Positions 644 through 53,992 of a DNA stretch of 64,000 nucleotides are shown here, in pieces. Where the stretch lies: the NCBI GenBank assembly GCA_964252035.1, contig OZ176204.1. One strand, 5' to 3'. The notes under the pieces were generated by a model, which saw only the letters and a list, made by a program, of their open reading frames with translations, had not been told where the DNA came from and did not search any database. Position 1 is the stretch's first letter, and the number at the start of each line of letters is the position of its first letter. A program made the translations under genes and the position numbers. The stretch is from Podarcis erhardii. Taxonomy: Eukaryota.

Positions 644-775
644 TTACAGATAGGTAGCCGTGTTGGTCTGCCATAGTCAAAACAAAAAAAATTCCTTCCA
701 GTAGCACCTTAAAGACCAACTAAGTCAGTTCTTGGTATGAGCTTTCGTGTGCATGCACACTTCTTCAGATACACA
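644..775 (-). mobile_element. Penelope-like retroelement terminal (pseudo-LTR) fragment
   Basis: TTACAGATAGGTAGCCGTGTTGGTCTGCC...GAGCTTTCGTGTGCATGCACACTTCTTCAGATAC, near-identical to the copies at 19727 and 44631; resembles recalled reptile Penelope/Poseidon ends; 11-bp direct repeat CTGAAAACAGA at 633-643 and 776-786. Confidence 0.75.
735..772 (-). ncRNA. Minimal type I hammerhead ribozyme motif (antisense to BTRC)
   Basis: Minus strand reads GUAU-CUGAAGA-A-GUGUG(CAUG)CACAC-GAAA-GC-UC-AUAC: catalytic core, 5-bp stem II, palindromic AGCU stem III, 4-bp stem I. Confidence 0.65.
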
Positions 776-9720: not shown

Positions 9721-9834
9721 TCCTAAACAACATTTGGTTGGCACCCATAGTTGATACATTTAAATAAAGGCTGAAGACATTTTTATTTGTCCAGGCTTTT
9801 GGATCTTAATGGAAACATTAAGGATAAGTATTAG

Positions 9835-10490
9835 GACCTGTTTATAACTTGATCATAAATGATCTAGAGTTAGGAGTGAACAGAGAGGTGGCCAAATTTG
9901 CTGATGATACTAAATTGCTCAGGGTTGTTAAAACAAAAAGAAAATGTGAAGAGCTCCAAAAGGACATCTCCAAACTGAGTGAATGGTCAATAAAATGGAA
10001 AACGCAGTTCAATGCAAAGTGTAAAGTCAGGGCAAAAAAGATTCATAATTTCACATATATGCTCAGGGGATCTGTCTGTGGCTGACCAGGAATGAGGGAT
10101 CCTAGTGGATATCTCAATGAAGATGTTCACCTCAGTGTGCAGCAGCTGTGAAAAAGGCAAATTCAATGCTAGGGAGCAATAGGAAGGGAATTGAAATCAA
10201 ATAAGGTGGTTATACAAATCTATGGTACAGCCACATTTGGAATACTGTGTGCAGTGCTAGTTTCCTCACACGAAATAAGACCTTGTAGAGTTGGAAAAGG
10301 TTCAGAAAAAGGCAACCAAAATGATTGTGGTAGTTGGGATTTCCCAATTTAGAGAGAAGGCAAATAAGAGGTGACATGAAGTTTATAAATAGATAGAAAA
10401 GTGACATGAAGTTTATAAATAGATAGAAAAAAGTTGTTCTCCCTCTCCCATAACATTGGAAGTCATGGATATCCAATGAAGTTGAATGTT
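9835..10490 (+). mobile_element. Degenerate CR1 LINE ORF2 (reverse transcriptase) fragment
   Basis: Translates INDLELGVNREVAKFADDTKLLRVVK...LQKDISKLSEW..KW..QFNAKCKV with the RT FADD motif at 9897-9908; frameshifted downstream; internal 30-bp tandem duplication at 10371-10430. Confidence 0.9.
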
Positions 10491-12624: not shown

Positions 12625-12778
12625 TGGCTCCATGCATTTAAAGTGTAAGACTTCTCCCAAATAATCTTGGGAACTGTAGCTGACCTCATACAGAGCTACA
12701 GCTAAAGTTTCCAGGAATCTTTACGGGAAGTCATGTACTTTAGGGGAAGTCATGTACTTCAAATGTTTAGTGGGTACC
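12625..12778. mobile_element. Old palindromic MITE remnant (squamate family; superfamily uncertain)
   Basis: Left CATTTAAAG..GACTTCTCCC and right GGGGAAGTCATGTACTTCAAATG are degenerate inverted arms; internal GGGAACTGTAGC/GAGCTACAG; 19-bp tandem duplication near 12725-12760. Confidence 0.45.
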
Positions 12779-12810
12779 TTTGACCACTTCCCATTACTCT
12801 TGCATAGAAG

Positions 12811-13011
12811 CAGTGGCGGAGCTTCATGTTCCGGCACCGGGGGGGCGGAGAGCAGGCAGGGGCGGGGCTGGCGTGCATCCTGAGGGTGTGGCATGTCGCC
12901 TGCGGGGGCATGGTGCCCAGCACAGGCAGGGGGGCAGCTGCAATGGCACCCACCAGGATCACACTGCCGGGGACAGTGTGCTTCTCCCACACTTCTCTTC
13001 CTCCGCCAGTG
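12811..13011. mobile_element. GC-rich hAT-type MITE (201 bp)
   Basis: TIRs CAGTGGCGGAG and CTCCGCCAGTG (10/11); 8-bp flanks CATAGAAG and CATGGACG (6/8) consistent with a TSD. Confidence 0.75.
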
Positions 13012-13248
13012 CATGGACGAAGCCAGCAGAGAGAAACATAACCTAGTTTAAAGCCATGTACTGTTTAGAGAAGTAAATATAATTAAGTCTTATTAGCATG
13101 TATTCTGTGAAGAAAGACTTGGGGGGAAATTGAATGCTGGGGGGCCGTGGGTGGGGGAGGTTGTGTGGATGTGTGTTTGCAGCCTTGGAAAACCATGACA
13201 AGGGGACAAAGTTTTTGGCAACTATGTTTAAGCTAACAAACGAATTTT

Positions 13249-13380
13249 NNNNNNNNNNNNNNNNNNNNNNNNNNNNNNNNNNNNNNNNNNNNNNNNNNNN
13301 NNNNNNNNNNNNNNNNNNNNNNNNNNNNNNNNNNNNNNNNNNNNNNNNNNNNNNNNNNNNNNNNNNNNNNNNNNNNNNNN
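13249..13380. other. N-run (132 bp)
   Basis: Directly visible. Confidence 0.99.
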
Positions 13381-19100: not shown

Positions 19101-19721
19101 GCAGTTGTTCAAGCTTCCTCAAGAATCATTGAGCCCAGAAGCAGAAAAGTTTACGTGGCAGCGCTTTGTTTTGTCCAAAGTGAAATAGGAATGAGCCAAA
19201 TCCACTATGGAGCACCCTTCCTCATGCTTTGAATTTTTGCTCCTTCACAGGAATATTAAAAACACTTTTGCTTCTTGTTGCTGCTGGGTTTTTTGGGATG
19301 GAATGCATAGAGGATCTTTTGCTTTTTTGGTTTTTATTTAGATTTGTGCTCCATTGTGTGTTTTAGTTTTCTGTAAACCACATTGAAATACTCTTGGAAT
19401 GTACACCTTTGTAGAAATTAAGTAAATAATAGCTTCGGTTCCCCAGGAAAATAATAACCTTGTGGAGAACAGAGTGTTACCACCTACCCCACATTTTAAC
19501 AATTGACAAAATGAGCTTTTGCAGGTGGTGGGGGAGGTTGGGTCTCTGCTTTAAACCACTGCTGTAGAAGAGTTTGGAGTTGGAATATTCCCCCCCCCCC
19601 CGCCCCGCCCCTAGATTTCTTAATTTAAGAACTTGGAGGTGCATTTTTTTTCATGGTCCTTGAAATGTAAGGCTCTTGATTTAAGCAGTCCAAATCCCTG
19701 TAGGGCAGACTTGACCATTGT

Positions 19722-19961
19722 TCCAGTTACAGATAGGTAGCCGTGTTGGTCTGCCATGGTCAAAACAAAATAAAAAAATTCCTTCCAGTAGCACCTTAAA
19801 GACCAACTGAGTTAGTTCTAGGTATGAGCTTTCGTGTGCATGCACACTTCTTCAGATAGATGTGTATCTGAAGAAGTGTGCATGCACACGAAAGCTCATA
19901 CCTAGAACTAACTCAGTTGGTCTTTAAGGTGCTACTGGAAGGAATTTTTTTATTTTGTTTA
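19722..19961. mobile_element. Penelope-like insertion with inverted duplication
   Basis: Perfect 97-bp inverted arms 19762-19858 and 19865-19961, 6-nt loop GATGTG; 15-bp TSD AGACTTGACCATTGT at 19707-19721 and 19962-19976. Confidence 0.85.
19864..19901 (+). ncRNA. Minimal type I hammerhead ribozyme motif (sense to BTRC pre-mRNA)
   Basis: GUAU-CUGAAGA-A-GUGUGCAUGCACAC-GAAA-GC-UC-AUAC; predicted cleavage after C19897. Confidence 0.65.
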
Positions 19962-20130
19962 GACTTGACCATTGTGTATGATATCTCTGTATGACTATAT
20001 AATGCAGGCTGTCTGCTTTAAAAGTAGAAGCCCATGAATGCAATTAGCTGCTCTAAATACATGAAACACCTTACCTTTAGAACAAATACAGTTCCATTAT
20101 CCAAACCATTATTTCGTTTTTTCTTCACAG

Positions 20131-20220
20131 ACCTATAATAGCTGTGCCAGGCTCTGCATCAACCAGGAAGCAGTTTGCTTAGGGAGCACTGCTATGAAGA
20201 CTGAAAACTGTGTGGCCAAG
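20131..20220 (+). CDS. BTRC: BTRC coding exon (human exon 4 equivalent): TYNSCARLCINQEAVCLGSTAMKTENCVAK
   Basis: Polypyrimidine tract and cacag acceptor ending 20130, donor GTAAGT at 20221; 90 nt, phase 0/0; matches human TYNSCARLCLNQETVCLASTAMKTENCVAK. Confidence 0.97.
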
Positions 20221-43371: not shown

Positions 43372-44629
43372 CAAATAATGAATATTTTGACTCCATCAAC
43401 CAAGCAGCTCAAACACTTTACTATCACCATGATGGAGAAATGCTACTGTGTCCAGAAACAGCCAGGCTAAGTGAAAGTTCTGGAAACGTAGTCTTCAAGT
43501 AAGTGATCAAGTGCTTATCAATATAGAGAGAACCAAACAGAAATCAATCCTGAATTTTACATCTGTCCCTTAAAGTCAGTATAAATTCTGTAGTGCAGAA
43601 AGCATATAGACTGCATGACCAAGGACTTTGGATTATGATCCTGGGTTTGCTTTAAAGCACTGATGAGCTGAGTTGCCATCTCATGATACCCTTAGAACTT
43701 AGTTTTCCAAACTTAGTTTTTAAAATGTGTATTTTAAGGGAAATAGCTTGGTTAATTTCAGATCCACACCAAATCTGCACCCCACTCTGCTGCCACGAAG
43801 TAAGTAGTGGGTAGAGGGAGAAGTTGGCCTTTTCTGGCTCTGATTACAATTCAAGCCTTCAAAAAATGGGGGAGGAGGCCATGGCCCTGTTGGGAATGCT
43901 GCTTGCTTTGGGAGTGCCAATTTCATAGTCCAAACCGGATCATTACAAAGTTCAGCAGTATAATTAATATAAAGCTTCTACTTAGTTGTAAACAAACATG
44001 TTTTTATTTGTTGTAGTAACCATTTTGTATGTGTCCCTTGTTGAGGAAATGTATGAATTGAAATCTGGAGACATAATTTAAATGTGTTCCACTCTGCAGA
44101 TCCATTCTGCAGATGAAAATAATGCAGGTTACGTAGTGTAGTAAGTATGCTGATACAGACTGGTACAATTTCCAGTAGTGTGTCCCCCCTTTATTGAATT
44201 GTATCAGATAAAATAAACATACTGCAATATAGGACACAAAGAAGAAGGGACAAAACCTGATTCCCTGCTATAGAAAAGCTTTCCCTTTTAGTTTCCAATA
44301 CAGTTATGTTCCAAAGGCCTTGCTAAAGAAATATGTTTTTAATTAACAAAGTCAATCAGATTTCATTTGGGAGCTTCACAGATTGGGGAGCCACAGACAG
44401 GAACGCCCTGCTCTGTGTCATTGCCCTATGGGCCATGCCCATGGACAGCAACACAAGCTGGGACTCTCTAGTGTTCTTTACAGGCTGGGAGGTGTTGAGG
44501 AAGGCATTCATTTCAGTACTGGGTCATCTAGAACTTGGTACATCATCAGTTGGTGAATTTGCTCTTTCCCTTCTCACTGCCCCACATAATAGCTGGACAG
44601 CAGTATCTTGCATACCTGAAGGTACCTGA

Positions 44630-44671
44630 AGGTATCTGAAGAAGTGTGCATGCACACGAAAGCTCATACCT
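44630..44671 (+). ncRNA. Minimal type I hammerhead ribozyme motif with 6-bp stem I (sense to BTRC pre-mRNA)
   Basis: AGGUAU-CUGAAGA-A-GUGUG(CAUG)CACAC-GAAA-GC-UC-AUACCU; predicted cleavage after C44665. Confidence 0.68.
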
Positions 44672-44726
44672 AGAACTAACTTAGTTGGTCTTTAAGGTGC
44701 TACTGGAAGGATTTTTTTTATTTTGT
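44631..44726 (+). mobile_element. Penelope-like terminal fragment
   Basis: Near-identical to the right arm of the 19722-19961 element. Confidence 0.8.
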
Positions 44727-45471
44727 CATAACTGGTGAAACATTGTAAACCAGAGTTTCCTTGTTGTAGTCAGTCACATTGTATTCTGTTGCTCTTTCCG
44801 GTCATTTCATTGCTAGATTATCTAATGCCGCACTCCCTGCAACCCTTTCAGTTGGGTTCCAAAGTCTTGCAGTGGGAGGGGGGTGGCCTGATTCTCCCCA
44901 CCATTGCTATCCCAAATAGCATGAACCATCCAATCTGCTGCCATTCAGTACTGATCTTACTGTGAATACACATGAAAGGCCCTGGACTCTGGTATTTTCA
45001 GTTACCATGACTTCCCTGCACTGAAACCTGTTGCTATGGTTGTGCCACTGCCTCCTGTTCCCTTGCTGCAGTGTTCAAATGCCCCCTCTAGGATGATCAC
45101 CCCCCTTTGTTTGTATGCCAGCTAACCTACTCAGTGCAGCTGATACTTTGGTTGCCAAACCACAAAGCAGTGTTTAGGTCTGACTGCATTTCAGTACCGT
45201 ATTGTCTTTCTTCCCCCATCCCCAAGTCTCTCTGCCCTTGCCTGTTCTCCTCCTTCTGCCTTTGCTTAGGTAATGTCCCCAATGAAGAAAAAATGTCCCC
45301 AATGCTTTTAACTTCACAGCAAAGTTAGAACGCTACGCAGGAAGTTAACTGCCTCGAGTCTTTTAAATTTAAGTAACACACACCAAATAATAAGCTGTTG
45401 GTTGCGTTTTTTTGTTTTGTTTTGTTTCTGTTTTGTTGGTGTGGGTATTTTTTTTCCCTGCCTGCAAAGAA

Positions 45472-53760: not shown

Positions 53761-53992
53761 ACAAAACTTGCCAATGGCACTTCAAGCATGATTGTGCCAA
53801 AGCAAAGGAAGCTATCTGCAAGCTATGAAAAGGAGAAGGAGCTCTGTATCAAGTATTTTGAGCAGTGGTCAGAGTCCGACCAGGTGGAATTTGTGGAACA
53901 TCTCATCTCCCAGATGTGTCATTATCAGCACGGGCACATCAACTCATACCTCAAACCTATGTTACAGAGAGACTTCATCACGGCACTACCAG
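53761..53992 (+). CDS. BTRC: BTRC coding exon (exon 5 equivalent), D (dimerization) domain: [77 protein letters not shown]
   Basis: Acceptor ttccatag ending 53760, donor GTAGTC at 53993; 232 nt, phase 0/1; near-identical to beta-TrCP1. Confidence 0.98.

What the first reader, a model, noticed from the sequence alone, without database searches (positions are those of the whole stretch)
44630..44671. Best-formed hammerhead: unlocked, sense to BTRC, 6-bp stem I
Seen: AGGUAU/AUACCU stem I, intact CUGAAGA and GAAA core, 5-bp stem II, CUC cleavage triplet, and no adjacent antisense arm. It has one extra A between the core and stem II, shared by all copies here. Known: intronic hammerheads exist in amniote genes, and Penelope-like elements encode minimal ones. 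Inference: the copy most likely to cleave BTRC pre-mRNA (after C44665), provided it can dimerise through AGCU.
Basis: partly seen in the sequence, partly recalled or inferred. Interest (0 to 1): 0.7.

Follow-up and report, generated by a model that had tools for sequence, protein, structure and literature searches.

The report
Inert Penelope hammerhead copy, BTRC intron
The 42-base hammerhead-ribozyme motif in a BTRC intron is real, but it is the standard incomplete ribozyme carried by a short, young copy of a lizard Penelope-type jumping gene, and it most likely never cuts the gene's RNA.

Summary
The motif is at 44630-44671 (+), as described. It has a 6-bp stem I, a CUGAAGA box, one extra A, a 5-bp stem II, GAAA, then GC-UC with the cut after C44665. 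It lies sense to BTRC, in the 33.5-kb intron between exons 20131-20220 and 53761-53992.

It is not a host ribozyme. The 30-nt core occurs four times, identically, in this window. Each copy sits in a roughly 95-132-nt terminal module of a Penelope-like element (PLE).

The extra A, the G10.1-C11.1 pair, the missing helix III and the palindromic AGCU are the published hallmarks of PLE minimal hammerheads (PMC4209133). Single motifs of that kind showed no detectable cleavage in vitro. An Anolis PLE hammerhead cut only when the element's protein was added, and no RNA-seq reads ended at its cut site (PMC11167929).

"Unlocked" is wrong. A threefold repeat of the element's 10-nt 5' tip builds a -17.5 kcal/mol hairpin (44609-44650) that holds the ribozyme's 5' half. 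The AGCU self-duplex is worth only -2.5 kcal/mol, and no free sense partner lies in the same intron.

This scan has flagged the same family many times elsewhere in this genome. The read-based test could not be run.

The parts
44630..44671 (+). Minimal type-I hammerhead motif: stem I 44630-35/44666-71; core CUGAAGA 44636-42; extra A 44643; stem-loop II 44644-57; GAAA 44658-61; palindrome AGCU 44661-64; predicted cut between 44665 and 44666
   Evidence: Read directly. My descriptor scan finds it with stem I of 6 bp and none in 200 shuffles. Folded alone, stems I and II form with p>0.7-0.99.
44632..44726 (+). Tail-less PLE terminal module (hammerhead to the first reverse-transcription start). It is 97.8% identical to the copies at 19.8 kb and 95.7% to the copy at 739. 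The 3' end is accurate to about 2 nt. The 5' edge is blurred by the tip repeat.
   Evidence: Alignment of the four copies and pairwise identities. It ends about +86 from A9, matching the tail boundary at nt 85 of Anolis Poseidon PAc (PMC11167929).
44613..44641 (+). 10-nt tandem repeat (2.9 copies) of the element's extreme 5' tip (GTAYCTGAAG). It creates the AG that lengthens stem I to 6 bp.
   Evidence: TRF: period 10, 94% matches, score 51. The canonical tip TGTGTAT-CTGAAG is seen in copies 739 and 19868.
44609..44650 (+). Predicted competing hairpin (7+2+7 bp, -17.5 kcal/mol) that holds the 5' strand of stem I, C3, U4 and the 5' strand of stem II
   Evidence: The inner helix has p>=0.96 and the outer about 0.8 from the moment nt 44650 is made. 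Stem I has p<=0.002 in the stepwise folds and <=0.014 in wider contexts.
644..775 (-). Sibling copy: a 132-nt tailed module antisense to BTRC, flanked by an 11-bp target-site duplication TCTGTTTTCAG (633-643 and 776-786)
19722..19960 (.). Sibling head-to-head pair: a tailed arm on the - strand and a tail-less arm on the + strand, joined tip to tip. It is flanked by a 15-bp target-site duplication AGACTTGACCATTGT (19707-21 and 19961-75). It contains the only other sense hammerhead (core 19868-97).
   Evidence: The penalty for the ribozyme fold is 41-62 kcal/mol.
20131..20220 (+). BTRC exon upstream of the host intron (AG acceptor, GTAAGT donor)
53761..53992 (+). BTRC exon downstream of the host intron. 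It encodes the beta-TrCP D domain.
   Evidence: Pfam PF12125, E 5e-26. PDB 6ttu_T FBXW1A residues 109-185, E 6e-48. Splice sites read.

Best explanation
The motif is the built-in minimal hammerhead of a Penelope-like retrotransposon (PLE). It arrived as part of a roughly 95-nt dead-on-arrival mini-copy.

Inferred origin: a PLE RNA that begins just 5' of the ribozyme was reverse-transcribed from the first of the element's two internal start sites (about +86) to the RNA's 5' end. There the enzyme re-copied the last 10 nt about three times. The product integrated, sense-oriented, into a 33.5-kb BTRC intron.

In the element's own life cycle the half-ribozyme can only act when two copies pair through the AGCU palindrome to build a shared helix III, probably with help from the element's protein.

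In BTRC pre-mRNA this solo copy has no partner and no helix III. It lacks the downstream RNA where the protein engages. Its 5' half is predicted to be trapped in a local hairpin. It is therefore expected to be spliced out with the intron as an inert passenger.

Shown here: the motif, its repeat-family membership, its orientation and position in the gene, and the predicted folding energies. Inferred: the insertion mechanism and the lack of cleavage.
For: - Four identical 30-nt cores sit in near-identical modules. Two of them have clear target-site duplications.
- The module geometry matches the tail of Anolis Poseidon PAc. Ends fall at about +86 and about +121 from A9, against PAc nt 85-119.
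- All non-descriptor hallmarks of PLE min-HHRs listed in PMC4209133 are present: a base between positions 9 and 10.1, G10.1-C11.1, and palindromic 15.2-16.2.
- The literature reports no detectable cleavage by a single motif, and low activity of dimers, mostly at non-physiological Mg2+.
- The PAc hammerhead is inactive without its protein, and no RNA-seq reads begin or end at its cut site.
- Folding: a competing hairpin of -17.5 kcal/mol, a penalty of 3.6-5.9 kcal/mol for the ribozyme fold, and the lock formed before the 3' half exists.
- AGCU/AGCU is worth -2.5 kcal/mol.
- The only other sense copy lies in the preceding intron, inside a long hairpin.
Against: - No experiment or read data for this locus could be obtained.
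- Nearest-neighbour folding ignores the tertiary stabilisation of the hammerhead core. A penalty of 4-6 kcal/mol is not an absolute barrier.
- This copy has the longest stem I and the smallest penalty of the four.
- The element's protein, or abundant sibling RNAs, might supply a partner in cells where the PLE is expressed.
- No target-site duplication was found for this copy, so its 5' boundary is not fixed.
- The PAc evidence comes from a different PLE family whose sequence is unrelated outside the core.
Confidence: 0.88

Rival explanations
1. One reading: the copy self-cleaves BTRC pre-mRNA after C44665 by pairing its AGCU with a second hammerhead RNA. The result would be lower BTRC output or premature termination.
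For: The core is intact and stem I is 6 bp. It is the least hindered of the four copies. Dimeric and trimeric PLE min-HHR constructs do cleave weakly in vitro.
Against: - A single motif gave no detectable cleavage.
- The 4-bp AGCU duplex is only -2.5 kcal/mol.
- There is no free sense partner in the same intron.
- The 5' half is sequestered with p>=0.96.
- Even when a slow hammerhead cuts an intron, splicing proceeded with similar efficiency in vivo (Dye et al. 2006, as summarised in PMC2995048).
Confidence: 0.04
2. Conditional, protein-assisted cleavage: where the parent PLE is expressed, its dimeric RT-endonuclease protein brings two hammerhead RNAs together and cuts this intronic copy too.
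For: The PAc hammerhead cleaves only with PAc protein, independently of the endonuclease active site, and the protein is predicted to be a dimer.
Against: - In PAc, insertion activity needs the first 172 nt of the ORF, and the protein is proposed to engage the RNA at the reverse-transcription start region. This copy stops at about +86 and lacks the tail.
- No read ends were seen at the cut site in Anolis RNA-seq, even for the element itself.
- The lock hairpin would still have to open.
Confidence: 0.05
3. The insertion has been co-opted for something other than cleavage, for example as a structured intronic element or a cryptic splice signal from its U-rich end.
For: Only that it is sense-oriented and carries a U-rich tract (44712-44726) and stable hairpins.
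Against: It is 97.8% identical to sibling copies, so it is young. It lies 24.4 kb and 9.1 kb from the splice sites. Nothing distinguishes it from the other mini-copies.
Confidence: 0.02

Closest known systems
Minimal hammerheads of metazoan Penelope-like elements (min-HHR; Cervera & de la Pena 2014, PMC4209133)
   Same: CUGANGA and GAAA boxes; an unpaired base between A9 and G10.1; a G10.1-C11.1 pair; a helix II longer than the canonical 4 bp; a short open helix I; no helix III, with palindromic 15.2-16.2; carried by PLE terminal repeats and scattered mostly as single truncated copies. Reported in reptiles (turtle and snakes).
   Different: This lizard family has A as the extra base, AGCU as the palindrome and a fully palindromic 14-nt stem-loop II. 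In this copy, stem I is stretched to 6 bp by an insertion-junction repeat.
Poseidon_Ac (PAc) hammerhead of Anolis carolinensis (Frangieh et al. 2024, PMC11167929)
   Same: The same layout: core, one extra base, G10.1, GAAA plus a 2-nt palindrome plus UC. Genomic copies end at two reverse-transcription start sites about 35 nt apart (PAc nt 85-119; here about +86 and +121). Head-to-head pairs fit extension of both target strands.
   Different: The sequence is unrelated outside the core boxes. In PAc the extra base is U, forming the ORF's AUG, and the palindrome is ACGU. Here no ORF starts in the ribozyme: the ATG in loop II meets a stop after 7-9 codons (read).
Ultraconserved intronic hammerheads of amniotes (Rfam HH9 and HH10), from my own knowledge of de la Pena & Garcia-Robles 2010
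   Same: A type-I hammerhead lying sense in an intron of a protein-coding gene.
   Different: Those have a stable hairpin helix III and loop-loop tertiary contacts, are single-copy, are conserved across amniotes and are recognised by Rfam models. This one has none of those properties.
Non-LTR retrozymes (tandem hammerhead repeats giving circular RNAs; PMC7229834; bioRxiv 10.64898/2026.07.22.740005)
   Same: PLE-derived type-I hammerheads that need two neighbouring copies to cut.
   Different: Retrozymes are tandem arrays of whole units. Here only the 10-nt tip is repeated, and there is a single ribozyme.

Membership tests
PLE minimal hammerhead (min-HHR) | Conserved boxes C3-U4-G5-A6-N7-G8-A9 and G12-A13-A14-A15.1, then U16.1 and H17 | tested here: met
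   CUGAAGA at 44636-42, GAAA at 44658-61, U44664, C44665
PLE minimal hammerhead (min-HHR) | [quoted passage not shown] | tested here: met
   A44643, in all four copies. Named as a conserved feature in PMC4209133.
PLE minimal hammerhead (min-HHR) | G10.1-C11.1 pair closing a helix II longer than the canonical 4 bp | tested here: met
   G44644-C44657, 5 bp plus loop CAUG
PLE minimal hammerhead (min-HHR) | No hairpin helix III; palindromic 15.2-16.2, so that two copies can share a helix III | tested here: met
   A-GC-U at 44661-64. The self-duplex of 4 bp is -2.5 kcal/mol.
PLE minimal hammerhead (min-HHR) | Carried by a Penelope-like element (pLTR or terminal module) | tested here: met
   Repeat module with target-site duplications, an optional tail of about 37 nt and head-to-head pairing. 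The end geometry matches PAc. No RT-endonuclease ORF of the parent lies in this window, so the link to a PLE rests on this architecture.
PLE minimal hammerhead (min-HHR) | Self-cleavage as a dimer | not testable with these tools
   Needs a transcription and cleavage assay
Canonical type-I hammerhead (Rfam Hammerhead_1, HH9, HH10) | Scores at or above the family's covariance-model threshold | tested here: not met
   No Rfam match at gathering score over the window, nor at E<=10 over 44400-44900
Canonical type-I hammerhead (Rfam Hammerhead_1, HH9, HH10) | Hairpin helix III of at least 1-2 bp capped by a loop | tested here: not met
   Only GC lies between A15.1 and U16.1, so no loop is possible
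Amniote ultraconserved intronic hammerheads | Single-copy and conserved at the orthologous intron across species | tested here: not met
   Four identical cores in 64 kb. The module is 97.8% identical to a sibling, so the insertion is recent. Orthologous loci in other species could not be examined.
Non-LTR retrozyme | Two or more complete hammerhead units in direct tandem | tested here: not met
   One complete motif. The tandem repeat is only the 10-nt tip.
PLE insertion (this copy) | Target-site duplication flanking the insert | tested here: inconclusive
   Only a 7-mer is shared between the flanks. I estimate about 0.45 such matches by chance.

The most novel reading that the evidence does not exclude
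Solo PLE half-hammerheads lying sense in host introns might be cut when the parent element's dimeric protein is present, for example in germ cells. The many such copies in this genome would then be conditional pre-mRNA cleavage sites. This one, the least hindered in BTRC, would be among the most responsive.
Probability: 0.03. Interest if true: 0.75.

Novelty: already known. Interest (0 to 1): 0.12.

Why it matters
If the copy cut BTRC pre-mRNA, a young transposon would be tuning a central ubiquitin-ligase adaptor, and the many sibling copies would be a genome-wide layer of RNA cleavage. The evidence points the other way.

The practical value is a rule for this genome. A PLE hammerhead hit is a transposon tag. 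The extra base after A9 and the missing helix III are family hallmarks, not lesions. Local context should be folded before a copy is called free.

The junction features seen here fit the two-start, both-strand mechanism shown in vitro for an Anolis PLE. They are the tip repeat, the tailed versus tail-less ends, and the tip-to-tip pairs.

Tried and rejected
- Rfam at gathering score and at E<=10: no hammerhead. This is expected, because Rfam models require helix III. It is not evidence against the motif.
- Target-site duplication search for this copy: only an insignificant 7-mer.
- Upstream partner as a degraded antisense arm: rejected. It contains the sense CTGAAG box repeated with a 10-nt period.
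- Identity with Anolis Poseidon_Ac: rejected. Its published consensus shares only the core boxes and the layout.
- Extended-duplex dimer through the 14-nt palindrome: -40.4 kcal/mol against 2 x -11.7. It is thermodynamically favoured, but it forms no three-way junction, so it is a dead end and not an active dimer.
- A nested dot-bracket for the double hammerhead: it cannot be evaluated, because it is a kissing or pseudoknot topology. I used the isolated AGCU duplex energy instead.
- BTRC exons were searched one at a time by reference.

Full report
**Observation**

The + strand at 44630-44671 reads AGGUAU-CUGAAGA-A-GUGUG-CAUG-CACAC-GAAA-GC-UC-AUACCU. That gives:
- a 6-bp stem I;
- the 5' core box, whose position 7 may be any base;
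- one extra A;
- a 5-bp stem II beginning with G10.1-C11.1, inside a perfect 14-nt palindrome;
- the GAAA box;
- the 2-nt insert GC;
- U16.1 and C17, with the predicted cut after C44665.

A descriptor I wrote for this architecture finds exactly four sites in the window, with stem I of 6, 4, 4 and 3 bp. It finds none in 200 shuffles. The 30-nt core is identical at 739-768 (-), 19826-55 (-), 19868-97 (+) and 44636-65 (+). Rfam reports no hammerhead at gathering score or at E <= 10. That is expected, because its models need a helix III.

**What carries the motif**

All four cores sit in near-identical modules. This copy is 97.8% identical to the two at 19.8 kb and 95.7% to the one at 739.

- The copy at 644-775 (-) is 132 nt long. 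It starts TGTGTAT-CTGAAGA, ends in an AC-rich segment (GGCAGACCAACACGGCTACC...), and is flanked by an 11-bp target-site duplication.
- The two copies at 19722-19960 are joined tip to tip and share one 15-bp target-site duplication. One arm has the AC-rich tail of about 37 nt. The other stops at the T-rich tract.
- The copy under study also stops at the T-rich tract, near 44726.

Counted from A9, the two kinds of 3' end lie at about +86 and about +121.

**Comparison with the literature**

Cervera and de la Pena (PMC4209133) defined the minimal hammerheads of metazoan Penelope-like elements. [quoted passage not shown] They occur mostly as single truncated copies, and reptiles are among the hosts. 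The same paper found no detectable self-cleavage for a single motif. Dimeric and trimeric constructs had low activity, mostly at non-physiological Mg2+.

Frangieh et al. (PMC11167929) studied Poseidon PAc of Anolis carolinensis.
- Reverse transcription starts at two internal sites, and these bound an optional tail spanning nt 85-119.
- Both target strands are cut and extended.
- The hammerhead shows no cleavage without the element's protein.
- No RNA-seq reads begin or end at the cleavage site.

The published PAc consensus shares only the layout with the present family: CUGAGGA-U-G..., GAAA-CG-UC. This is therefore a different PLE family with the same design. The tailed and tail-less ends and the tip-to-tip pair seen here fit that mechanism.

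**Gene context**

Stop-free stretches on the + strand spell beta-TrCP1 peptides. Searched exon by exon, by reference:
- 53761-53991 matches Pfam Beta-TrCP_D (E 5e-26) and PDB 6ttu_T, F-box/WD repeat protein 1A, residues 109-185 (E 6e-48);
- 58022-58222 matches the F-box.

The flanking exons are 20131-20220 (AG acceptor, GTAAGT donor) and 53761-53992. The motif is therefore sense to BTRC, in a 33,540-nt intron. It lies 24.4 kb from the donor and 9.1 kb from the acceptor.

**Is it "unlocked"?**

Folded alone, the 42-mer forms stems I and II. In context it does not.

TRF finds a 10-nt repeat of 2.9 copies at 44613-44641. This is the element's extreme 5' tip (GTAYCTGAAG) copied about three times. 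The repeat supplies the AG that lengthens stem I from the family's 4 bp to 6 bp.

The repeat also creates a GGTACC palindrome and, with TGCATAC upstream, an interrupted 16-bp hairpin at 44609-44650 worth -17.5 kcal/mol. The hammerhead's secondary structure is worth -10.9 kcal/mol. The hairpin pairs the 5' strand of stem I, C3, U4 and the 5' strand of stem II.

- With 30-230 nt of flank, stem I has probability 0.014 or less.
- Forcing the ribozyme-competent fold costs 3.6-5.9 kcal/mol.
- Folding successive transcript lengths shows the hairpin in place (p about 0.96-0.99 inner, 0.6-0.8 outer) once nt 44650 is made. That is before the 3' halves of stems II and I exist.

The same calculation gives 6.9-8.1 kcal/mol for the copy at 739 and 41-62 kcal/mol for the head-to-head pair.

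**Dimerisation**

The AGCU self-duplex is worth -2.5 kcal/mol (-3.9 with neighbouring bases). From those values I estimate a millimolar dissociation constant. I take that to be far above any plausible nuclear RNA concentration.

The only other sense copy (19868) lies in the preceding intron and inside a long perfect hairpin.

The thermodynamically best homodimer is an extended duplex through the palindromes (-40.4 kcal/mol). It has no three-way junction and would not be active.

Protein-assisted pairing remains conceivable. But in PAc the RNA needed for activity extends well beyond +86, where this copy ends.

Even if slow cleavage happened, an intron cut by a hammerhead was spliced with similar efficiency in vivo (Dye et al. 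2006, as reported in PMC2995048).

**Verdict**

This is a real, family-typical PLE minimal hammerhead in a young, dead-on-arrival mini-copy, most likely inert in BTRC pre-mRNA (confidence 0.88).

The insertion history is inferred: the transcript starts just before the ribozyme, reverse transcription begins at the first internal site, and slippage occurs at the RNA's 5' end. Here I could only see that two of the four copies start at the same TGTGTAT.

The scan has noted the same family many times elsewhere in this genome, and the follow-ups reached the same kind of conclusion. I do not count those notes as independent evidence.

**Limits**

- The species was not identified here. "Lizard" comes from earlier notes.
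- No target-site duplication was found for this copy.
- Folding energies are nearest-neighbour estimates that ignore tertiary contacts.

Noticed in passing
window 19707-19975: A head-to-head PLE pair within one 15-bp target-site duplication. One arm has the AC-rich tail of about 37 nt. The other stops at the T-rich tract about 35 nt earlier. This is the pattern expected if both target strands primed reverse transcription at the two internal start sites described for Anolis PAc. It lies about 170 nt upstream of BTRC exon 20131-20220.
   Followed up: partly
window 44613-44641: The element's last 10 nt at the 5' tip (GTAYCTGAAG) are repeated 2.9 times, with T/C differences between units. This looks like a slippage or template-jump signature at the end of the RNA template.
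   Followed up: partly
window 644-775 (-): A complete 132-nt tailed mini-copy with an 11-bp target-site duplication, antisense to BTRC. In the pre-mRNA it presents a roughly 90-nt complement of the sense copies, in an upstream intron.
   Followed up: partly
window 9828-10082 (+): A stop-free stretch with a reverse-transcriptase-like FADDTKL motif, probably a LINE fragment. It is not the PLE parent.
   Followed up: no
window 12720-13065: A GC-rich block with long stop-free stretches in several frames on both strands, next to the N run at 13249-13380. Its nature was not examined.
   Followed up: no
window 44650-44673 and 745-754 (-): Unlike Anolis PAc, where A9-U-G10.1 is the ORF start codon, this family has A9-A-G. 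Its only nearby ATG, in loop II, meets a stop after 7-9 codons. The ribozyme therefore lies in non-coding sequence of this family.
   Followed up: partly
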